From positions 124,001 to 188,000 of the IMG/VR virus record IMGVR_UViG_3300033233_000001: 64,000 bases of DNA; one strand, written 5' to 3'. Each line of letters opens with the position of its first letter. Within the stretch, counting starts at the first letter, position 1. A program made the translations under genes and the position numbers. A model generated the notes under the pieces. The model made no database searches. It saw nothing but the letters and a program-made list of their open reading frames with translations, and was not told the origin of the DNA. Of the stretch, positions 39,807-54,223 are shown one piece after another.

Positions 39807-40400
39807 ATGAGCCGACCCGAGATCTACATCAGTCTCGACATCGAGGCGGACGGACCCTGCCCCGGCGTCAACTCGATGTTGTCGCTCGGCGCGGCCGCGT
39901 TCGATCCGACCAAGGGCGCCGGCCTCGCCGGCCTCATCGCACAGTGGGAGTCCAACTTCGAGCTACTGCCTGGCGCGGCGCAGAACGCGGAGACGATGGC
40001 CTGGTGGGCAACAAAGCCAGAGGCGTGGGCCGAGTGCCGGAAGAACCCACAAGACCCGATCTTCGCGATGGCCTCGTTCGCGGCATGGGTCAAGGCACTG
40101 CCGGGTAAGCCTATCGCGGTCTGCTATCCAGCGGGCTTCGATTTCACGTTCGTGTATTACTACCTGATGCGCTTCAACAGAAGTTCGCCGTTCGGGTTCT
40201 CCGCGCTCGACGTCAAGAGCTACGCGATGGGCTCGCTCGGAACGGGCTTCGCGGAGTCGTCCAAGAGGAACTATCCGAAGACGTGGTTCGACACCAGCCT
40301 GAAGCACACGCACAAGGCGATCGACGACGCGATCGAGCAGGGCGTGATGTTCATGAACGCGCGCGCGAGTCGACTCGCGACGCTGCAAGAGGAGCGGTGA
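39807..40400 (+). CDS. DEDDh 3'-5' exonuclease
   Basis: LDIEADGP, GFDF and HKAIDDA. Confidence 0.85.
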   Translation: MSRPEIYISLDIEADGPCPGVNSMLSLGAAAFDPTKGAGLAGLIAQWESNFELLPGAAQNAETMAWWATKPEAWAECRKNPQDPIFAMASFAAWVKALPGKPIAVCYPAGFDFTFVYYYLMRFNRSSPFGFSALDVKSYAMGSLGTGFAESSKRNYPKTWFDTSLKHTHKAIDDAIEQGVMFMNARASRLATLQEER

Positions 40401-44384: not shown

Positions 44385-45206
44385 TCACTTCTTCTTGCTG
44401 CTGCCGCGCGGCAGCGTCGAGCGCTTGAGCGGCACGCCCTTCGGCACCGAGCCGAGCGGCGGCGCGATGCCGACGCTCACGCTGGCCCCGGAAAACCCGA
44501 CGAGCGACGACGACGCGTCGCCGGTCGCCATCGCGTGCACCTCGTTCTGGCTGAAGAACGACGACTCGCCGCGCACGACCGACTCGTAGCTCTCGGACTT
44601 CATCCCGCGACTGCGCAGCACGGCTGCACTCGTCGAGCCATAGAGAGCCTTGACGCCACCAGCATGGCCCGCGTAGTTCGCGGTCGACATGCCCTTCATG
44701 CCGTAGCTCTGGCCGGTCTGGAACGAGTCGATGTTCGCGCCAGCGAAGACGAAGAGCCAGCCGGCTTCCTGCTGCTGCTCCTTCACGAGCGTGCGGACCT
44801 GCTCGATCTTGTACTCCTTCGACGCGTTCTCCTCGCCGTCGGTGTGCACGATGACGATGACCTTCTCCGGTCGGTCCTTCGCAGCGAGCTTGTCGACTCT
44901 GGTTCCGAGCGAGACGATCGCACGCCCGAGCGCGTCGAGAAGCGCGGTGCCTCCGCGCGGCTCGTACGTCAGCGCCGTGAGCGCCGGCACGTCCGCGAGC
45001 GGCATGTCGAGGTAGTTCTCTTCGTACGCGTTATCGAACTGCACGAGGCTGACCGAACACGGGCTCTGGTCTTCGCGCTGGTCAGCAATCAGCTTGTTGA
45101 AGCCATCGATCACGGCGTTTCGCAGGCCAGCCATCGAACCTGACCTGTCGAGCACGAACATGATGTGCGTGCGCCCTGCTTCCATCGCCTTCTTCTTCGT
45201 CATCAT
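44385..45206 (-). CDS. vWA domain protein
   Basis: MIDAS DRSGSM, GGTALLDA and TDGEENAS. Confidence 0.9.
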   Translation of the reverse strand: MMTKKKAMEAGRTHIMFVLDRSGSMAGLRNAVIDGFNKLIADQREDQSPCSVSLVQFDNAYEENYLDMPLADVPALTALTYEPRGGTALLDALGRAIVSLGTRVDKLAAKDRPEKVIVIVHTDGEENASKEYKIEQVRTLVKEQQQEAGWLFVFAGANIDSFQTGQSYGMKGMSTANYAGHAGGVKALYGSTSAAVLRSRGMKSESYESVVRGESSFFSQNEVHAMATGDASSSLVGFSGASVSVGIAPPLGSVPKGVPLKRSTLPRGSSKKK

Positions 45207-45625: not shown

Positions 45626-45670
45626 AATCTACGGCGTGTCGGACAGAATGTCAAGCGGCTTCCGACACAC
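45626..45670 (-). promoter_or_regulatory. promoter with operator boxes
   Basis: GTGTGTCGGAAGC, then TTGACA-17-TAGATT-8-GTG. Confidence 0.7.
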
Positions 45671-45724
45671 CAGCTTCCGGCCATACCGCCACGCAGTCCG
45701 ACGTAAGGCCTGGGGCTTCATCGC

Positions 45725-46028
45725 CCCGACGCACCTAACACTTCGATCTCGCATGTGTCGTACCAGCATGAGTCCGAGCGACCTGACCTGCTTGACCCTT
45801 CGATCTCGCCTGTCGAGGGGCGCTGGCGTGACGCGCGTCACGGCCCGACCTGCTTGACCCTTCGATCTCGCCTGTCGAGCAGCTGGCTAACACTGCGTGG
45901 CCATCCGATCAAAGACTACCCGACCTGCTTGACCCTTCGATCTCGCCTGTCGAGGCCTACGGCGACCTCGACGCCGGGGCCCGCGACCGTGTCCCGACCT
46001 GCTTGACCCTTCGATCTCGCCTGTCGAG
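45725..46028 (-). CRISPR. Cas12f-associated array (4 repeats plus a divergent terminal repeat)
   Basis: 36-nt repeat CTCGACAGGCGAGATCGAAGGGTCAAGCAGGTCGGG at 45993, 45919, 45844 and 45782; variant at 45725; spacers of 38, 39, 26 and 21 nt. Confidence 0.92.
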
Positions 46029-46090
46029 AGCCGTCGAAAAACACCAGCGATTCCGCGGGCCTCGTAGCCGGTCTGCGAGCGGTCCCTGTT

Positions 46091-46287
46091 CTCGACATGT
46101 GAGATCGAAGTGCCAAGCACGTTCGAGCGCTTCGTGGCCAACGCATCGAACTGGATTTCCGAACAAGTACCATTACTTGCTACGGTCCACGTACCTTCGC
46201 GAGCGGGTCCGGTACTTTTGCAAGCACCGGGGCCCCTCGCGTTCGTGCCCATCGGGGGGCACATCACCGAACTTGCGTTCGGAGAAA
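46091..46287 (-). ncRNA. tracrRNA, copy 1
   Basis: Inverted repeat copy (anti-repeat) at 46091-46126 plus hairpins; paralogous to 48632-48812. Confidence 0.8.
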
Positions 46288-47805
46288 TCATTCGGCCGCC
46301 TGCGCCTTCTCCGTGCGGGCCTTCTTTCGGATTCGACCGGACGCGCGCTTGATCGCTGCGATCTGATCCGGCAGCGGCAGCGGCTTACCGTCCCGCAGGA
46401 GCATGTTCCACGCGTAGATGACGTCGACGGGACGCTCTAGCCTGCACGTCACGACCTCACAGCAGAACTTGCCGCTCTTGCCGAAGGTCGCGCTGACCTC
46501 GGCCGAGTGCTCGTGCAGGCACGACGGACACGTCCGCGAGTTCATGTCGCTCGGCACGATCTCGACCGTCAGCCCCCGCTTCTTCGCCGCCCACTCGATG
46601 GACTCTCGCAGCTGCGCGAGCGGGAAGCTCCGCACGAGGTACTCGACGTGTTCGCCAAGCTCGGGAGCGCCATCCTTCGCTGGATTGCCCCAGTCTTCGA
46701 CGAGGATCCGCGACACGCCGCGCCTTTCGGCGAGGCGCATCGCGTGCGACGCGATCTCCTGGCACTTCGTGCGTACCCACCTGGCCTCCGCGTCTTCGAG
46801 TCGCGTGAAGTGCTCTTCGCGCCGAGCAGTGCCGTGACCCTTGGCACCGTCACCAAGCTCGCGCTTGTGCCGACCGAGTGACGAGCGCCGCGCACGGTAC
46901 GCCGCCTTGTGGGCGAGCACGTCGCCGCCGTCGGCGAGCACAGTCGTGTACGCTTCACGCCCGTCGTCGCCGCGGGCGATTGCCGCGGTCAGGAACGTCC
47001 GCACGCCTCGATGCAGAGCCATCGTGCGGCCGGTCTCGGTCTTACGGACCTCGGAAGTGAAAGACACGAAGGCCATCCACTTCCGTTTGCCATCGCGATC
47101 GTCGTCTTCGACCAGGCGGCAGTCGCCGAGGCAGGCCGGATCGGCCAGAACACGCTTCAGCGACGCGAAGCCGCTTCCGCCGTAGGGCTTCACGACCAAG
47201 CGCACCTGTGTCGGCCGGTCGCTGTCCTCGCCGAACAACGGCAGCGTCAAGATCGCCAGGCCGTCGCTCGGTTCGAGACGGATCGCGCCGTTGCCTGACG
47301 CGATGTAGATCGGAGAGCCACCCCTGAAGGTGGGAAGCGACATCTTGCCCTTCCATTTTTCCTTCCGCCACTTCTTCCAGCGCGTGAAGGCCGCACCGGC
47401 CGTACCAAGCAGGACTTTCGCGCCGGGGTACGTCGTCGCGACCTTCTCGTCGCCGTAGTACGGCTTGCCCTTCTTGACGCGTGCGGCCGCGGCCTCGCGT
47501 TCGTTGAGCCAGAGGTCACGCGTCAGCTGGTAACTCCGCGACCGCGCTAGGATCTTTCCGGCCTTCTTTGCGCCGAGCTTGCCGGCGCGCTCCTCGACTT
47601 CGAGATCGGTGATCACGCCGTTGAGGACGCGATGGATCGGAGCGCGCAGCGCGCGCAGGAGCGGCCCGAGTGCCGCCCAGTCGTGGTCGAGCGGGCGGAT
47701 CACCTCCAACCGCAGGGTCGAGACGATCTGCGCATCGACCGCCGCATCGTCTAACGCGGCCTCGACGACGAGCGGCCCCGTCTCTTCTTCAGCGGGCTCA
47801 GTCAC
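46288..47805 (-). CDS. cas12f: Cas12f1-like effector, predicted nuclease-dead (about 505 aa)
   Basis: Colinear with AsCas12f1 as recalled (LEVIRPLDHDW, GKMSLPTF, DGGD..GHG, ILVED, CPSC/CCEV Zn ribbon); RuvC-I reads MALHRG in place of MGIDLG. Confidence 0.85.
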   Translation of the reverse strand: MTEPAEEETGPLVVEAALDDAAVDAQIVSTLRLEVIRPLDHDWAALGPLLRALRAPIHRVLNGVITDLEVEERAGKLGAKKAGKILARSRSYQLTRDLWLNEREAAAARVKKGKPYYGDEKVATTYPGAKVLLGTAGAAFTRWKKWRKEKWKGKMSLPTFRGGSPIYIASGNGAIRLEPSDGLAILTLPLFGEDSDRPTQVRLVVKPYGGSGFASLKRVLADPACLGDCRLVEDDDRDGKRKWMAFVSFTSEVRKTETGRTMALHRGVRTFLTAAIARGDDGREAYTTVLADGGDVLAHKAAYRARRSSLGRHKRELGDGAKGHGTARREEHFTRLEDAEARWVRTKCQEIASHAMRLAERRGVSRILVEDWGNPAKDGAPELGEHVEYLVRSFPLAQLRESIEWAAKKRGLTVEIVPSDMNSRTCPSCLHEHSAEVSATFGKSGKFCCEVVTCRLERPVDVIYAWNMLLRDGKPLPLPDQIAAIKRASGRIRKKARTEKAQAAE

Positions 47806-48422
47806 GCTGCATCTCGACGTGACGTGCGCTTCTGTGCCTCGACGGCCGACGGGCTCGTCTCCGAGCCGGCGGCGCGCTTCGGCGTCTTCCGCAGCTGCCT
47901 GATCTCGGCACGCAGCGTGGCGTTCTCGACGCGCAGACGGTCGCACTCTTCCTTGGCCGCGACGAGTTCACTCGCGAGCGCCGTGTAACTCTTGTGACCC
48001 GCGCCCGCTCCGAGAATTCGAGAGCGCAGATCGCTCGCGAGACGACTCACGGTCTGAGCCGAGATCGGCGTCCCGTTCGTACGCTCCCACGTCCGCGCCT
48101 CGTCGAGCATCTCGCGCTGCTTGCCGGCGTCGCGGAAGCGACCGGCGGCCACAACCGCATGAATTCCCACGCCTTCGATGCCCTTCGCGCCCAGACCGTT
48201 ACGCGCTGCCCTGTACCCGTCGTATCGCGACGGGCGGCACAGGTTCGTCTGCTCCAGGAACTGGAGGAACGTGAGGCCCGTGTCCTTCCACAGGCCGGTC
48301 ACCTGTTCCGCCTCGTAGAGATACGAGAGGAAGTCGCCCTCTGCATCGTCCGCCAGCGTTCGGAGACGCTTGGCCTCGGCGATGAACTGTTCGAGCGTCG
48401 TCGACTTGTTGATTCGCGGCAT
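47802..48422 (-). CDS. 206-aa protein translationally coupled to cas12f
   Basis: GTGA overlap with the cas12f start; C-terminal coiled coil. Confidence 0.75.
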   Translation of the reverse strand: MPRINKSTTLEQFIAEAKRLRTLADDAEGDFLSYLYEAEQVTGLWKDTGLTFLQFLEQTNLCRPSRYDGYRAARNGLGAKGIEGVGIHAVVAAGRFRDAGKQREMLDEARTWERTNGTPISAQTVSRLASDLRSRILGAGAGHKSYTALASELVAAKEECDRLRVENATLRAEIRQLRKTPKRAAGSETSPSAVEAQKRTSRRDAA

Positions 48423-48429
48423 GTTCGTA

Positions 48430-48473
48430 GGTCTACACGGCCCAGGACCGTGAGTCAAGAGCTTGCGACACAC
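48430..48473 (-). promoter_or_regulatory. promoter of the partner-cas12f operon
   Basis: Box GTGTGTCGCAAGC, then TTGACT-17-TAGACC-7-ATG. Confidence 0.7.
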
Positions 48474-48506
48474 CTCGTTCCGTGAAGTCGCGAACGCTGG
48501 AACCTA

Positions 48507-48594
48507 CCGGCACGGTCGACCTCTCGATCTGGCGCTGCGAGGTCGCTCTTGCGGCTCGCCCGACGCGCTTGACCATCGATCTCGCCGTCGCGAG
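48507..48594 (-). CRISPR. second degenerate mini-array (2 variant repeats, 17-nt spacer)
   Basis: 48559-48594 resembles the main repeat; 48507-48541 pairs with the anti-repeat at 48632-48666. Confidence 0.7.
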
Positions 48595-48631: not shown

Positions 48632-48812
48632 CTCGCAGCTCCAGATCGAAGGGCCGAACGTGTCCGAGCGCTTCATGGCCAACGCATCGAACTGGATTTC
48701 CTCATGAGCACCAGCGCTCACGAGGTCCACGTACCTTCGCGAGTGCGGCCGAGACCACCTCGCGTTCGGGCCAATCGGGTGGCCCATATCGCCGAGCTTG
48801 CGCTCGGAGAAG
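48632..48812 (-). ncRNA. tracrRNA, copy 2
   Basis: Shares GAGCGCTTC.TGGCCAACGCATCGAACTGGATTTCC, GGTCCACGTACCTTCGCGAG and CTTGCG.TCGGAGAA with copy 1. Confidence 0.8.
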
Positions 48813-49059
48813 TTCTTGTCGGACGTCATCGGCCGTCCCAGCCCTCGCGACGAGCGCGCTCCAACAGGTCGACGCGCTCGGGTCCGACCGCTGCGTGCTG
48901 CCACATCTGGACGTGGGCCTCCTCGACGTCGACGAGACGCACGATCTCGGCGTCCTCGCCGGCAAGCTGGACGAAGCCGGCCTCCGGGCGCCAAATCCAG
49001 ATCGGCCCGCAGAGTACGTTGCCGGACTTTAGCTTGATGGTGGCGTCACGCATTGGGCA

Positions 49060-49131
49060 TTCGGGGGCCAGGACTCGAACCTGGACGGGCGACTTCAAGG
49101 GACGCTGGCCTGCCGATTAGCCGAACCCCGA
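49060..49131 (-). tRNA. tRNA-Gln(TTG), atypical loop
   Basis: Cloverleaf; loop CCTTGAA. Confidence 0.7.
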
Positions 49132-50008: not shown

Positions 50009-50079
50009 CGGGAAAGAATACACAGGCCGAGGTCTTGCGACGAACCTCATCGAGCACGGCCTGTGGGGGAGTGATTGAA

Positions 50080-50169
50080 GTCGAGCAAGGGGAGTGACCT
50101 CGGGATCGGTGCGTGCCGGGTTAAATGCCCGGTGCGATTGAGGTGATAACCCGTGATCGTCGGCTCGAC
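50080..50169 (-). ncRNA. Y-RNA-like element
   Basis: GCCGA..GGTTATC..CCTTGC within a closed terminal stem. Confidence 0.72.
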
Positions 50170-50209
50170 TGTTGGTTTTGGTGAGACCCTTTCTAGCTGA
50201 TTGAAACTC

Positions 50210-50266
50210 CGAGCAAGGTGGTGTCCGACGGGTTTCAACCAAAGATAACCATCGGACTTCGGCTCG
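50210..50266 (-). ncRNA. Y-RNA-like element
   Basis: GCCGAAG..GGTTATC..CCTTGC immediately after the Ro60 stop. Confidence 0.72.
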
Positions 50267-50274
50267 AAGCAGAA

Positions 50275-51999
50275 CTAGTCGCGGATGAAGTCGGCGATGA
50301 CGGCCGGCGCCGCTGCGTCGAAGCCTACCACGTCGATCATGCCGGCGTCGGTCGGATCTGCGATCGTGAACTCCGACGCGTCGGTCGCGACCACGATGAG
50401 CTTGGACGCGATGCCCATGTTCTCGCGGTACTGCTTGAGCGCCACGTGCGGATGCACGGCGCCGGCCCACGTCTCGTTGTCCGTCGCGACGTAGAACGCC
50501 TCGACCTTCTGCTTCTGCGCGAGCGCGTGGAGCATCGGCAGCGCGCAGTCGGTGCCGCCCATGGGAACGGCCTCCATGGCCTTGATGACGTCGGGCAGCG
50601 TCGTCTTCGCCGTGATGTTGACCGGGAGCAGACGCGAGGGCTGGCCGCCCCAGCGTCCGCCGTAGCCAGCCGCGTGACCGGCCGAGCCGCTCGCGAAGCC
50701 CACGATGTCGTAGTCCGACTCGCGCCGCGCCGTGACCATCGCCATGCAGCCGACGGCCTCGCGTGCCGTGAGCGTCGTGCCCGCGATGAAGCTCGACGCC
50801 ATCGAACCTGACACGTCGAGCGCGAGCATGATGGACTTGCCGGTGGGCTCGACAGTCTCGAACGCCAGGTAGAACGCGTCGTCGAGGGCGTCGATGATGG
50901 ACTGCACCGGCGACCACGTCAGCTTGCCCTTCTCGCCGTGGCCGGCTGCGTACGTCTTGAGCGCGAGGAGCACTGCGATCGGATGCAGCCGCGACTTCTT
51001 GATGGCGTCGGCGTTCTTCAGCTGCTTCACGACGAGCTTCGATGCGTCCGAGCCAGGAACGAGCAGGCCGTTCGCCGTCATGCGCCCGAGGTTGCGCACG
51101 CAAGCGTGCATCGGCATGCGCTGGAGCAGCGCATCCCATACAACCGCGTGCTTCTGGTGCTCTGACGGCACCATCTCGTGAGTGAGCCCGTACTCACGGA
51201 TGATCGTGGCCGCCTCGTTCGCGTCCTTCGCAGCGCGCACCTTCTCGACGCCCTCGATCAGCGCCGGCAGGGCTCCGGCGGCGACCGCCTCGTACGAGAC
51301 GCCCGCCTCCTGCTGCTTGCGCTTGACGGAGCGCTCCCCGAGGCCGTCGCGTCCCGCGATGGTCCAGCGCAGGATGGACGAGACGATCGGATCCGTCGTC
51401 TTCGGGTGCGCCTGCCGAAGCAGGTCGCGGTGCGAGCGTCCGCCGCGCTGCTGGTACTTCAGCAGCTGGTAGGCGAGGTCTCGCCCCTCCTTGCTCGTGT
51501 ACCACGCGCCGACCGCGCGGCGCAGGCCCGAGCCCCAGCCGCGAAGCTGCTCGACCTGAGCGACGAACTCGAAGAGGTGCGTGCCGGTCCGGCACACGCG
51601 TGGCAGCGCGGCAAGCGCGAGGCGCCGCACAACCGCGTCCTCGTGGGCAGCGGCGACGGCGAGCGCGAAGATCGCCGCATCGTTCTTCGGCGCGCGACCC
51701 GACTCGCTGAGCGCAGCGATGTGCTCGACAGCGGCCGCAGCGTCGTCCTTGAGGCAGCGGCCGAGCGCGGTCGCGTTCTCCTTGACGAGCTTCTTCTCGC
51801 CGACGTGGAACGTCCCGCCCTCGGCGCCGAGGATCAGAAAACGGTCCAGCCGCTTCCAGTCGTCCACTTCAAACGTGAAGCCACCGGCCGCGTTCTTGAC
51901 CTGACGCACGTCGGCCTTCGCCGACTGCGGCGCGTCCTCGCGCGCAGCGGACACGGACTTCTTCTTCGACGCACCGAGGTGCGCGGCGTAGTTGGACAT
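50275..51999 (-). CDS. rsr: Ro60/Rsr TROVE-vWA RNA-binding protein
   Basis: NAAGGF..RFLILG, KYQQRGG..HRD, DVSGSM, GGTDCALPM, TDNETW and GFD. Confidence 0.95.
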   Translation of the reverse strand: MSNYAAHLGASKKKSVSAAREDAPQSAKADVRQVKNAAGGFTFEVDDWKRLDRFLILGAEGGTFHVGEKKLVKENATALGRCLKDDAAAAVEHIAALSESGRAPKNDAAIFALAVAAAHEDAVVRRLALAALPRVCRTGTHLFEFVAQVEQLRGWGSGLRRAVGAWYTSKEGRDLAYQLLKYQQRGGRSHRDLLRQAHPKTTDPIVSSILRWTIAGRDGLGERSVKRKQQEAGVSYEAVAAGALPALIEGVEKVRAAKDANEAATIIREYGLTHEMVPSEHQKHAVVWDALLQRMPMHACVRNLGRMTANGLLVPGSDASKLVVKQLKNADAIKKSRLHPIAVLLALKTYAAGHGEKGKLTWSPVQSIIDALDDAFYLAFETVEPTGKSIMLALDVSGSMASSFIAGTTLTAREAVGCMAMVTARRESDYDIVGFASGSAGHAAGYGGRWGGQPSRLLPVNITAKTTLPDVIKAMEAVPMGGTDCALPMLHALAQKQKVEAFYVATDNETWAGAVHPHVALKQYRENMGIASKLIVVATDASEFTIADPTDAGMIDVVGFDAAAPAVIADFIRD

Positions 52000-52037
52000 G
52001 ACGAATCTCCCAGAGACAAGAGCCCAGAGAATCAGAG

Positions 52038-52112
52038 CGTCCCATGGGGGACTCGAACCCCCGTTGCCGACGTGAGAGGCCGGCGTCCTTTGGCCATCTA
52101 GACGAATGGGAC
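52038..52112 (-). tRNA. tRNA-Glu(CTC)
   Basis: Cloverleaf. Confidence 0.88.
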
Positions 52113-52409
52113 AGGGAACTGTACAGGAACCGAAGACGAGATCAGGCCGCGACTTCTTCACCCGCGCGCGCCGGGGGCTTCGCTTCGACCTTCGGCGCGC
52201 ACTCCTTGCACACGAGCTTTTCCTTGGCGACCTCGTGTCCGAACCGCGTGTTCATCGGCCGGTCGAGGTGGTCGCGCTCGTACATGGCCACGCGGTACGA
52301 CGAGACGACGCGGACTGGGCGCGGGTCGAGCACGGTGCCGTTACGCATCGAGCCGTCGAACGCGATCCGGCAGACCTCACAGCGATAGCTCATCGGAATC
52401 ACCTTTTTC

Positions 52410-52932: not shown

Positions 52933-54223
52933 AAAATGTGATCGAACGTGTTCGTTCGGTCACGACTTGGCTCCTGCTTCCGCCACGACACTTGCTCGAC
53001 GCTGAGGCCGTCGAGTAGAGGCAGCCGTGTCCACAGGCGTAGCCTTGCGGCTGTTCCCCGAAAGCCTCGGGTACGCTTCCAAATTCAACGCGGCGTTGCG
53101 GTCTCGGTCCAGGACCAGACCGCATGCCTCGCACTCGTACGTCCTCGTGCCCAGCGACAACTCGGCCTTCACGACTCCGCAGCCGCTGCACGTCTTACTC
53201 GACGGGAACCACCGGTCAGCCACGATCACCTCGCAGCCGTAGACAGGTCCCTTCTGTATCAGCAGCGTCCTGAACATCCCCATCCCGACATCCGAGAGCG
53301 CACGCGCCAGCGAATGGTTTCTGAGCATCCCTGCCACGTTCATGCCCTCGATGACCGCCGCTTGGGTTTCACGCGCGATCTTCGTGGTCGTCTTGTGCAG
53401 GAAATCCTTCCGGATGTTCGCGACGTCTCGGTGAATCTTCGCCAGTTCCTCACGAGCCTTACGCCTGTTCGCGCTTCCCTCCTGTCTACGATGGAGCTTC
53501 CTGTTCGCACGCCGCAGCTTCTTCAACGCCTTCCGAAGCGGCTTCGGCGCGTCTAGGGGCTCTCCTCGTGACGGCACGACCGCAGTCTTGAGGCCCAGGT
53601 CGATGCCGAGGATCTCGTGCTCCGGGACGTTCGGCACCCGGAAGTCGCCCTCGACCTGAACCGACAGATACCAACGGTCGGCGATGCGCTTCACGCGACC
53701 GCCGAGGATCTTGCCGTGCAGCCTGAGCGGCTCGCGCGTCTTCACGCTGCCGATGACCGGGAGGTGAACGTGCTTGCCATCGGCAAGGAAATGGAATTTG
53801 TCGTTCGCGACGTAGAAGGCGTCACGGGTCTTGCCCTTCTTCTTGAAGTTCGGTGGTCCGACGCGTGGGCCCTGGCGCTTTCCCGTGATGCTCTTGATGT
53901 AGTTCGAGAACGCCGTGTCCAGGTCGGAGAACGCGCCGGCATTCGCGTCTCGCGGCGACTCGAAGATCCAGGGGAACGCTTCGCCCTTGATGGCGTTGAA
54001 CTGCTTCTTGAGCTTGGTCCCGCTGGGCTTCTGGCCGGCCCTGTACTGGCGGTTCCACTCGTGAAGTGCCCAGTTGTACGTGAAGCGCGCGACACCGCAT
54101 GCACGCAGCATCGCCTGGCGCTGCCGTACTGTCGGGTCGAGAGCTATGACGTGTCCGTGGATCATGTGATCGTGCGTCTGTAGTTTGTCCGTAAATGTCC
54201 GCGAAGACAAGAGCTAGCTATGG
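52924..54223 (-). mobile_element. non-autonomous IS607-like TnpB element
   Basis: Removing it rejoins GGAG|GGTGAACC, the tRNA 5' end; CGATCACAT occurs near both ends; no tnpA. Confidence 0.65.
52960..54165 (-). CDS. tnpB: TnpB RNA-guided endonuclease (intact D-E-D)
   Basis: N-terminal HTH, GIDLGLK, IEGM, CSGC/CEAC and DRDRNAALNL. Confidence 0.93.
   Translation of the reverse strand: MIHGHVIALDPTVRQRQAMLRACGVARFTYNWALHEWNRQYRAGQKPSGTKLKKQFNAIKGEAFPWIFESPRDANAGAFSDLDTAFSNYIKSITGKRQGPRVGPPNFKKKGKTRDAFYVANDKFHFLADGKHVHLPVIGSVKTREPLRLHGKILGGRVKRIADRWYLSVQVEGDFRVPNVPEHEILGIDLGLKTAVVPSRGEPLDAPKPLRKALKKLRRANRKLHRRQEGSANRRKAREELAKIHRDVANIRKDFLHKTTTKIARETQAAVIEGMNVAGMLRNHSLARALSDVGMGMFRTLLIQKGPVYGCEVIVADRWFPSSKTCSGCGVVKAELSLGTRTYECEACGLVLDRDRNAALNLEAYPRLSGNSRKATPVDTAASTRRPQRRASVVAEAGAKS

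What the first reader, a model, noticed from the sequence alone, without database searches (positions are those of the whole stretch)
45690..46126. Terminal 'degenerate' repeats track their local anti-repeats: a possible omegaRNA-to-CRISPR intermediate
Seen: the last repeat (minus strand ACATGCGAGATCGAAGTG) matches anti-repeat 1 (ACATGTGAGATCGAAGTG) better in this segment than the consensus repeat does (ACAGGCGAGATCGAAGGG). The same pattern holds in cassette 2. Spacers shorten distally: 38, 39, 26, 21 nt, and 17 nt in cassette 2. Inference: each cassette began as a tracr-repeat-guide unit, with terminal guides starting GCGATGAAGCCCCAGG and TAGGTTCCAGCGTTCG, and later gained repeat-spacer units. 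Short guides fit binding-only regulation.
Basis: partly seen in the sequence, partly recalled or inferred. Interest (0 to 1): 0.68.

Follow-up and report, generated by a model that had tools for sequence, protein, structure and literature searches.

The report
Hard-wired guide RNAs of phage Cas12f
A 298-kb phage carries a Cas12f-like protein that lacks a key DNA-cutting residue, and the "decayed" last repeats of its two small CRISPR-like cassettes are kept able to pair with their own neighbouring tracrRNA, so they look like working fixed guides rather than relics.

Summary
Array 1 (minus strand) has four 36-nt consensus repeats, a degenerate fifth repeat, and spacers of 38, 39, 26 and 21 nt. 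Cassette 2 has two repeats and a 17-nt spacer. Each terminal repeat pairs strongly and specifically with its own anti-repeat: -48.1 and -56.6 kcal/mol, against about -26 for the other cassette's. Equally mutated random repeats give about -25 to -34 and reach the observed value in at most 1 of 1000 trials.

The effector (46288..47805, minus) is closest to AsCas12f. In it and in all 150 best relatives, the first RuvC Asp is replaced by His, Arg or Asn, as in the non-cutting Cas12m2. A conserved ~205-aa coiled-coil partner gene sits directly upstream.

The guide after cassette 2's terminal repeat (AGGTTCCAGCG) is conserved in four related phages. In three of them the cassette is a single scaffold-plus-guide RNA.

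The best reading is hard-wired, orthogonal tracr:crRNA units for a binding-only effector, and no target was found. The proposed direction, omegaRNA to CRISPR, is not supported: the family lies closest to CRISPR-associated Cas12f, and more distant members have ordinary arrays. This is a new variant of a known kind.

The parts
48632..48822 (-). tracr-like scaffold 2, ending in anti-repeat 2 (48662-48632)
   Evidence: 79% identical to scaffold 1 over the core. nhmmer E 6e-60. Shared structure with compensatory pairs.
48559..48594 (-). repeat Ra of cassette 2 (array-1-like)
   Evidence: Pairs better with AR1 (-45.7) than with AR2 (-37.2).
48542..48558 (-). 17-nt spacer of cassette 2
   Evidence: Read from the sequence. 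No other match in the window.
48506..48541 (-). terminal repeat Rb, cognate to anti-repeat 2
   Evidence: Duplex with AR2 is -56.6, with AR1 -25.8. 0 of 1000 mutated controls reach it. Folds in cis with AR2 and loops out Ra.
48486..48505 (-). fixed guide of cassette 2 (AGGTTCCAGCGTTCGC...)
   Evidence: The first 11 nt are identical in L001, L016 and L017. 16 nt are shared with L017, although the flanks have diverged.
48430..48458 (-). promoter-like site (TTGACT, 17 nt, TAGACC) of the partner/effector operon, 7 nt before the ATG
   Evidence: Read from the sequence. The motif GTGTCGnAAGCnnTTGAC is conserved in L001, L010, L016 and L017.
47802..48422 (-). partner gene: 206 aa, helical N-domain plus C-terminal leucine zipper
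   Evidence: Homologue directly upstream of the effector gene in 10 related loci. AF2 pLDDT 83.6. No fold match.
46288..47805 (-). Cas12f-like effector with an H-E-D RuvC triad; probable GTG start at 47805 overlaps the partner's stop codon (GTGA)
   Evidence: Pfam Cas12f1-like_TNB. Profile against PDB: AsCas12f E 1e-38, with His aligned to the catalytic Asp. Family alignments. Start codon.
46091..46292 (-). tracr-like scaffold 1, starting at the effector's stop codon and ending in anti-repeat 1 (46131-46091)
   Evidence: Folds in cis with the first repeat.
45782..46028 (-). four consensus 36-nt repeats with spacers of 38, 39 and 26 nt; a 21-nt spacer follows at 45781-45761
   Evidence: Duplex with AR1 is -50.5, or -46.6 for the fourth repeat.
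45725..45763 (-). degenerate terminal repeat of array 1, cognate to anti-repeat 1
   Evidence: -48.1 with AR1 and -27.1 with AR2. 6 G:U pairs; only -34.7 if read as plus-strand RNA. Simulation.
45705..45724 (-). terminal guide of array 1 (GCGATGAAGCCCCAGG...)
   Evidence: Position only. No second match in the window or in IMG/VR. Not conserved in L010.
45626..45654 (-). promoter-like site (TTGACA, 17 nt, TAGATT) of the next gene, 8 nt before its GTG
   Evidence: 10 of 12 matches; 0.2 expected by chance.

Best explanation
The locus is a phage-borne, CRISPR-derived RNA-guided DNA-binding module, all on the minus strand.

Components:
- A Cas12f-type effector in which His replaces the first RuvC Asp.
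- A dedicated coiled-coil partner, made from the same operon.
- Two tracr-like scaffolds, one downstream of the effector gene and one upstream of the operon.

Each scaffold ends in its own anti-repeat, and the last repeat of each cassette is kept complementary to that anti-repeat only. The two terminal units are therefore orthogonal, hard-wired tracr:crRNA pairs. In cis they fold like natural single-guide RNAs, and their guides are fixed genomic sequence. The consensus repeats of array 1, and repeat Ra of cassette 2, are an exchangeable set that uses tracr 1.

Shown: the anatomy, the pairing and its non-randomness, the transcribed strand, the active-site substitution, the conserved partner, and the conserved cassette-2 guide.

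Inferred: the effector binds without cutting DNA and so silences or otherwise regulates transcription at targets matching roughly 11 to 20 nt of each guide; the partner acts in complex with it; and the fixed units arose from a CRISPR array rather than preceding it.
For: - Pairing and specificity.
- Mutated-repeat simulations: 1 of 1000, 0 of 1000 and 0 of 1000.
- Strand asymmetry: -48.1 as minus-strand RNA against -34.7 as plus-strand RNA, from 6 G:U pairs.
- Scaffold homology and compensatory pairs.
- Active site: His312 aligns with the catalytic Asp of the AsCas12f MGIDLGV motif, while the Glu and the last Asp are kept. Across 150 representatives this position is H in 112, R in 27, N in 16, K in 2 and never D.
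- Precedent: Cas12m2 has an HDD triad, holds one Mg ion, binds strongly and does not cleave (PMC10442227).
- Partner: conserved next to the effector gene in 10 loci.
- Complex prediction: ipSAE 0.52 against a best control of 0.00, which the tool rates as weak support.
- Guide AGGTTCCAGCG is conserved in four phages with 68-74% identical effectors, while the neighbouring scaffold and spacing vary.
- In L016, four mutually divergent repeats all pair at -46 to -52 with one anti-repeat, with spacers of 15-17 nt.
- Ancestral arrays in distant members.
Against: - No target was found for any guide or spacer in the 64-kb window, IMG/VR, the phage collection or bacterial genomes.
- Loss of cleavage is inferred from sequence only. 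The Glu and last Asp are strongly conserved, so some catalysis, for example on RNA, is possible.
- The null model of the simulation assumes descent from the consensus repeat. Shared ancestry of anti-repeat and terminal repeat would also give complementarity.
- The cassette-1 terminal guide shows no conservation.
- The partner has no recognisable fold, and the complex prediction is weak.
- No RNA data exist, so transcription, processing and loading are untested.
Confidence: 0.55

Rival explanations
1. Each cassette began as an omegaRNA-like tracr-repeat-guide unit of a TnpB-like protein and is on its way to becoming a CRISPR array, so this is a snapshot of CRISPR origin.
For: - In L001, L016 and L017 the upstream cassette is a single scaffold-plus-guide RNA.
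- Scaffold 1 starts at the effector's stop codon, as omegaRNAs do.
- Ra looks like an added unit.
Against: - The profile matches AsCas12f at E 1e-38 but TnpB only at about 1e-11.
- Distant members (L002, L012, L013, L015, L031) have regular arrays with full-length anti-repeats, so tracr plus array is the ancestral state of the family.
- The single-guide upstream cassette occurs only in one subclade, and L010 lacks it.
- The canonical TnpB 5 kb away is unrelated.
Confidence: 0.1
2. Neutral relics. Terminal repeats are simply the oldest and least homogenised repeats, and they resemble the anti-repeat because both keep ancestral bases. The sequences after them are not guides.
For: - Degenerate last repeats are common in CRISPR arrays (general knowledge).
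- In L012 the last repeat pairs worst, at -35.
- No target was found.
Against: - All 10 changes in terminal repeat 1 keep pairing, four of them through G:U pairs that work on one strand only.
- Rb and AR2 share changes absent from every other repeat.
- The guide after Rb is conserved across four phages while its surroundings diverge.
Confidence: 0.1
3. An ordinary interference-competent type V-F system used against competing phages. His substitutes functionally or another residue completes the site, and the short spacers are deletion products.
For: - RuvC Glu and the last Asp are conserved across the clade.
- Spacers are full length in many relatives.
- The first 20 nt of spacer 1 match a tailspike-like gene of another viral contig.
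Against: - No member among 150 representatives has Asp at RuvC-I.
- The His-type triad of Cas12m2 does not cut.
- The 20-nt match does not extend over the rest of the spacer and may be chance for an 80% G+C word.
- No adaptation genes were seen near the locus, although only ORFs within about 10 kb were scanned.
Confidence: 0.15
4. The conserved AGGTTCCAGCG block is a DNA-level element of the operon promoter region, such as an operator or UP-like site, and not an RNA guide.
For: It always lies 11-21 nt upstream of the conserved GTGTGTCGnAAGCTCTTGAC promoter block.
Against: - The spacing to the promoter varies (21, 13 and 11 nt).
- The block begins exactly at the repeat/guide junction in all four loci.
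- Conservation decays from the 5' (seed) end: 7 nt in five cassettes, 11 in four and 16 in two. That is the pattern expected of a Cas12-type guide.
Confidence: 0.1

Closest known systems
Type V-F CRISPR-Cas12f (AsCas12f; PDB 8j12, 7wju)
   Same: - Best sequence match, E 1e-38.
- Compact WED/REC/RuvC/zinc-finger effector.
- Long tracrRNA whose 3' anti-repeat pairs with about 36-nt repeats; the array lies downstream.
   Different: - The first RuvC Asp is His throughout the clade.
- The family is restricted to phage-like metagenomic contigs.
- There is a dedicated coiled-coil partner.
- There is a second tracr cassette.
- Repeats are heterogeneous and spacers range from 15 to 55 nt.
Cas12m2, type V-M (PMC10442227)
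   Same: Non-canonical RuvC triad with His at the first position. It binds tightly and silences transcription without cutting.
   Different: - Cas12m uses no tracrRNA.
- Sequence similarity is marginal: the only Cas12m chain hit was at E 0.17.
- The triad here is H-E-D rather than H-D-D.
- Cas12m is mainly plasmid-borne.
dCas12f-sigmaE RNA-guided transcription (Hoffmann et al., PMC13472631)
   Same: - Naturally cleavage-deficient Cas12f relatives with a co-encoded protein partner.
- Single guide RNAs with a 3' guide, which the authors suggest came from CRISPR repeat-spacer units.
   Different: - That group is inactivated by C-terminal truncation; here the C-terminus and last Asp are intact.
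- The partner here is not a sigma factor.
- PDB 9n9c matches only at E 7e-5.
- This is a phage context and it retains arrays.
TldR / TnpB-omegaRNA (10.1101/2023.11.30.569447; PDB 8exa)
   Same: - Scaffold encoded at the 3' end of the protein gene, with the guide at the RNA's 3' end.
- Nuclease-dead derivatives act as repressors, some of them phage-encoded.
   Different: - This family is far closer to Cas12f than to TnpB.
- It uses separate anti-repeat:repeat duplexes and arrays.
- No transposon ends were seen.
- The intact TnpB in the same window is unrelated.
CRISPR-derived regulatory RNAs (Cas9 tracr-L and scaRNA; CreR/CreA mini-arrays). Own knowledge, not checked here.
   Same: Degenerate repeat plus a short or partial-match guide, used by a Cas effector for repression rather than cleavage and located next to the cas promoter.
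   Different: - Those systems use nuclease-active effectors with partial matches.
- Here the effector itself is altered.
- The degenerate repeat has a private anti-repeat.
- No promoter target was identified.

Membership tests
Type V-F CRISPR-Cas12f | Compact effector homologous to Cas12f (RuvC plus zinc-finger TNB) | tested here: met
   Pfam Cas12f1-like_TNB. Family profile against PDB: AsCas12f E 1e-38, with other Cas12f chains at 1e-31 to 1e-18.
Type V-F CRISPR-Cas12f | tracrRNA with an anti-repeat complementary to the CRISPR repeat | tested here: met
   Duplexes of -43 to -66 kcal/mol in the window and in 7 relatives. Conserved scaffold structure. Expression was not tested.
Type V-F CRISPR-Cas12f | Adjacent CRISPR array | tested here: met
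   5 repeats in the window and 3-6 in relatives.
Type V-F CRISPR-Cas12f | Canonical D-E-D RuvC triad and dsDNA cleavage | tested here: not met
   His at the first position here, and H/R/N/K in all 150 representatives. Cleavage itself cannot be tested with these tools.
Type V-F CRISPR-Cas12f | Adaptation module (cas1, cas2, cas4) in the locus; present in some V-F loci | tested here: inconclusive
   None among the ORFs scanned within about 10 kb or in the gene lists of related loci. The rest of the 298-kb genome was not seen.
dCas12f-sigmaE | Adjacent ECF sigma factor gene | tested here: not met
   The partner gives only coiled-coil hits in Pfam and no fold match.
dCas12f-sigmaE | C-terminal truncation that removes part of the RuvC site | tested here: not met
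   The zinc finger and the last Asp (RPVDV) are present and conserved.
TnpB-omegaRNA / TldR | Closest homology to IS200/IS605 TnpB, and a single omegaRNA without an array | tested here: not met
   TnpB chains match only at E about 1e-11, against 1e-38 for Cas12f. Arrays are present. Only the upstream cassette of L001, L016 and L017 is single-guide.
Cas12m (type V-M) | Sequence membership and tracr-independent crRNA | tested here: not met
   The only Cas12m chain matched at E 0.17, and a tracr-type anti-repeat is present. Only the His-type triad is shared.
CRISPR-derived regulatory guide (tracr-L, scaRNA, CreR type) | The guide matches a promoter or gene that it represses | tested here: inconclusive
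   No second match to any guide in the window or the loci. The 16-mer occurs once in its own contig. Genome hits are scattered.

The most novel reading that the evidence does not exclude
A large clade confined to phage-like metagenomic contigs (at least 461 clusters at 50% identity) of Cas12f-derived effectors with an H/R/N-E-D site works as RNA-guided transcription factors. In huge phages they act with a new coiled-coil partner and two orthogonal tracrRNAs. One tracr serves an exchangeable array. The other serves a hard-wired, evolutionarily conserved guide, released from a tRNA-Gln-scaffold fusion, that controls a host gene or the operon's own promoter.
Probability: 0.3. Interest if true: 0.8.

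Novelty: new variant of a known kind. Interest (0 to 1): 0.62.

Why it matters
Three things would follow if this holds.

1. It adds a third independent route by which Cas12f/TnpB-type proteins became binding-only regulators, after Cas12m and dCas12f-sigmaE/TldR. This route is in huge phages and has an unknown partner protein.

2. It shows degenerate terminal repeats kept under selection to pair with a private anti-repeat. Array-end "junk" can then be a functional, orthogonal guide unit, and one locus can run two non-cross-reacting tracr:crRNA pairs. That would be useful for multiplexed compact dCas tools.

3. Within one small clade the relatives range from a regular array, through a heterogeneous array with short spacers, to a single fused guide. 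The transition between CRISPR arrays and single-guide RNAs becomes directly testable, whichever direction it ran.

Tried and rejected
**Target searches, all negative or uninformative**
- The first 12-20 nt of every spacer and guide found only themselves in the window.
- Searches with 9-11-mers in the related loci found nothing.
- The array against 50,697 phage records gave only E 0.3 hits.
- In IMG/VR, the 20-mer of spacer 2, the 20-mer of spacer 4, the 18-mer of terminal guide 1 and the consensus repeat each found only the phage's own contig.
- The 20-mer of spacer 1 has one extra hit, in a beta-helix tailspike-like ORF of IMGVR_UViG_3300048851_000105. The remaining 18 nt do not match. I estimate the chance of such a hit at roughly 0.05-0.2 for an 80% G+C word.
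- The 16-mer of the conserved guide gave 11 unrelated hits in IMG/VR.
- The same 16-mer gave more than 120 hits in bacterial genomes. It is the antisense of codons for E-R-W-N-L and recurs in several unrelated genes. These include aceE (15 of 119 hits; Pfam PDH_E1_M), a gene whose local translation reads like MucR/Ros by my recollection, and others.
- L017's guide extends to 22 nt against one Burkholderiales aceE, while the window's extends to 18 nt against the MucR-like site. The two point to different genes, so neither is accepted as a target.

**Other dead ends**
- Partner fold: Foldseek against PDB found nothing at E <= 0.001. VIA-align gave a best Z of 6.1 over 64 residues, which is in the helical-bundle noise range.
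- Partner-effector complex: the median ipSAE of three runs was 0.52, against a best control of 0.00. The runs agree in at least 48% of contacts, and the partner's pLDDT is at least 77. The mark was reached by 58 of 80 solved complexes and 2 of 110 mismatched pairs. At 0.60 or under it was reached by only 7 of those 80 and by both of those mismatches, so the tool rates the support as weak.
- Bacterial genomes hold no close relative of the effector.
- Rfam has no family for the scaffolds.
- The neighbouring TnpB was rejected as an ancestor or partner: BLASTP E 0.44.
- "Terminal repeats track anti-repeats" is not a general rule of the family. Repeats are homogeneous in L002, L013 and L015, and in L012 the fourth of six repeats is the perfect match while the last is the worst.

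Full report
**What is there**

The window is part of IMGVR_UViG_3300033233_000001, a 297,749-bp viral contig; contig coordinate = window + 124,000. It is G+C-rich and carries 33 tRNA genes.

The finding lies in a compact minus-strand locus. In order of transcription it contains:
- tracr-like scaffold 2, ending in anti-repeat 2 (48822-48632)
- repeat Ra (48594-48559)
- a 17-nt spacer
- terminal repeat Rb (48541-48506)
- a sigma-70-like promoter (48458-48430)
- a 206-aa gene (48422-47802)
- a Cas12f-like gene (47805-46288), whose GTG start overlaps the upstream stop codon as GTGA
- scaffold 1, ending in anti-repeat 1 (46292-46091)
- a 62-nt gap
- four consensus repeats, a degenerate fifth repeat (46028-45725), and a second promoter-like site (45654-45626)

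**Observation check**

The quoted strings, the spacer lengths (38, 39, 26, 21 and 17 nt) and the better local match of the last repeats to the anti-repeats are all correct.

| Pair | Duplex energy (kcal/mol) |
|---|---|
| AR1 : consensus repeat | -50.5 |
| AR1 : terminal repeat 1 | -48.1 |
| AR2 : Rb | -56.6 |
| AR2 : Ra | -37.2 |
| AR2 : consensus repeat | -42.5 |
| AR2 : terminal repeat 1 | -27.1 |
| AR1 : Rb | -25.8 |
| AR1 : Ra | -45.7 |

Each terminal repeat is therefore specific for its own anti-repeat, and Ra prefers AR1.

This is not chance. Repeats carrying the same number of random substitutions as the terminal repeats pair at -24 to -34 kcal/mol. They reached the observed values in 1 of 1000, 0 of 1000 and 0 of 1000 trials.

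None of the ten differences between terminal repeat 1 and the consensus costs a pair. Three restore Watson-Crick pairs with AR1, four are transitions that give G:U pairs, and three are a 2-nt register shift. The duplex contains six G:U pairs and drops to -34.7 if the plus strand is read as RNA. That identifies the minus strand as the RNA strand and points to selection at the RNA level.

**The protein**

Pfam finds only the Cas12f1-like TNB domain. A profile of 16 family members hits AsCas12f structures at E 1e-38 and other Cas12f chains at 1e-31 to 1e-18. TnpB-type chains score about 1e-11, and the nuclease-deactivated Cas12f of PDB 9n9c scores 7e-5.

In those alignments the catalytic Asp of MGIDLGV is aligned with the His of MALHRGV, while the Glu (ILVEDW) and the last Asp (RPVDV) are kept.

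An exhaustive HMMER search finds 461 clusters at E <= 0.001. Among the 150 best, the first catalytic position is H in 112, R in 27, N in 16 and K in 2, and it is never D.

All sampled members come from metagenomes, on phage-like contigs. None was found in 185,579 bacterial and archaeal species genomes with the close-family patterns.

A His-first triad has a precedent. Cas12m2 (HDD) holds one Mg ion, binds the non-target strand and silences without cutting (PMC10442227). Loss of cleavage here is inferred, not shown.

**The partner**

A ~205-aa ORF sits directly upstream of the effector gene in the window and in 10 related loci, at 31-60% identity. In the loci where both gene calls were listed, its stop overlaps the effector's start.

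It has a confident all-helical model (pLDDT 83.6) with a C-terminal leucine zipper, but no recognisable fold.

A complex prediction gave ipSAE 0.52 against a best control of 0.00, which the tool rates as weak support (counts under Tried and rejected).

More distant clade members (L031, L032) lack this partner.

**Relatives**

- Every locus with enough flank has a homologous scaffold after the gene. The shared structure has 5 pairs with compensatory changes.
- L002, L013 and L015 have regular arrays with homogeneous repeats.
- L010 and L012 have heterogeneous repeats; in L012 the fourth of six is a perfect 29-nt match to the anti-repeat.
- L016, the closest relative (74% identical), has four mutually divergent repeats that all pair at -46 to -52 kcal/mol, with spacers of 55, 15 and 17 nt.
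- L031 has start-to-start spacings of 74, 72, 60, 67 and 67 nt and a degenerate last repeat.

Irregular, non-homogenised arrays are thus a trait of part of this clade. They fit guide sets that are inherited rather than acquired.

**The upstream cassette**

A second scaffold upstream of the operon exists only in the window, L001, L016 and L017.

In L001 and L016, and in one of the two L017 copies, it follows a tRNA-Gln(-like) gene directly. It lacks a full anti-repeat/repeat duplex and folds as one scaffold-plus-guide RNA. L010 has only about 45 nt between the tRNA-like gene and the promoter.

In all four phages the sequence right after the last repeat-like element is AGGTTCCAGCG. Sixteen nt are shared by the window and L017. 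It is followed, after 21, 13 or 11 variable nt, by the conserved promoter block. A fifth cassette, the other copy in L017, shares the first 7 nt.

Conservation that starts at the repeat/guide junction and decays towards the 3' end is what a Cas12-type seed predicts. A DNA operator remains possible.

**Mechanism proposed**

The effector, probably with the partner, uses two non-cross-reacting tracr:crRNA pairs. The terminal units are hard-wired single-guide-like RNAs; in the window, AR2 pairs with Rb in cis and loops out Ra. The consensus repeats and Ra use tracr 1. With a His-type RuvC site the likely output is binding, meaning silencing or another form of transcriptional control. Targets are unknown.

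**Direction of evolution**

The family is closest to CRISPR-associated Cas12f. Its distant members carry regular arrays, and the fused single-guide cassette is confined to one subclade. The simpler history is therefore CRISPR to fixed guide, as Hoffmann et al. suggested for dCas12f guide RNAs, and not omegaRNA to CRISPR.

The intact ISDra2-like TnpB at 52960..54210 is unrelated to the effector.

**Verdict**

The system works like Cas12m or dCas12f-type binders but is a member of neither. It fails the D-E-D criterion of canonical V-F. I rate it a new variant of a known kind, with interest 0.62.

Noticed in passing
window 50275-52161 (-), 50206-50271 (-), 50078-50172 (-): The phage encodes a Ro60/TROVE protein (Pfam E 1e-47 to 1e-57). 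Two elements follow it that match Rfam RF01656, a nematode sRNA family that I recall as stem-bulge (Y-RNA-like) RNAs. They score 39.3 bits (gathering score 38) and 24.3 bits. Related repeats follow Ro60 in L001 and L010. These are likely phage Y RNAs.
   Followed up: partly
window 52960-54210 (-): A canonical IS605-type TnpB of 416 aa with an intact RuvC triad. Its best PDB matches are ISDra2 TnpB at E 1e-52. It lies 5 kb from the locus and is unrelated to the Cas12f-like gene (BLASTP E 0.44).
   Followed up: yes
L001 5050-5125, L016 2497-2570, L017 4161-4231, L010 3227-3298; window 49060-49131 (-): A tRNA-Gln(-like) gene directly abuts the 5' end of the upstream guide-RNA scaffold in L001, L016 and L017. 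This natural tRNA-guide fusion could be released by tRNA processing. In the window about 240 nt separate the two.
   Followed up: partly
window 48430-48471 (-), 45626-45665 (-); L001 5322-5345, L010 6169-6215, L016 2763-2785, L017 4493-4515 and 5334-5356: A shared extended promoter motif, GTGTGTCGnAAGCnnTTGAC, then 17 nt, then TAGnnn. It ends 5-8 nt before the start codon where I checked this (window and L010), which suggests leaderless transcripts and hints at an actinobacterial-type host.
   Followed up: partly
L017 4545-5162 and 5387-6004: L017 has two paralogous partner genes in tandem, each preceded by its own scaffold-guide cassette and promoter.
   Followed up: no
L008 793-1590, L011 3277-4074: In two relatives (67-69% identical effectors) the ORF upstream of the effector starts like Ro60 and ends out of frame. 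No intact partner ORF was found, so a deletion may have joined Ro60 to the operon.
   Followed up: no
window 45818-45843 (-); L010 6130-6160: Spacer 3 contains a perfect 14-nt palindrome (GTGACGCGCGTCAC). The L010 array ends in a long GC palindrome. Both could be hairpins or terminators inside or after the arrays.
   Followed up: no
window 45130-45172 vs 50798-50840: A 43-nt stretch of the vWA gene downstream of the array (44385..45206) is 84% identical to the vWA part of the Ro60 gene. This suggests a duplicated vWA module.
   Followed up: no
window 49-64 kb (-): A dense block of about 30 tRNA genes on the minus strand. An Rv2179c-like 3'-5' exoribonuclease gene lies at 39807..40400 (+).
   Followed up: no
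L030 6231-6250 (IMGVR_UViG_3300048851_000105): The first 20 nt of spacer 1 match a beta-helix tailspike-like ORF of another viral contig exactly; the rest of the spacer does not match. This may be chance.
   Followed up: partly
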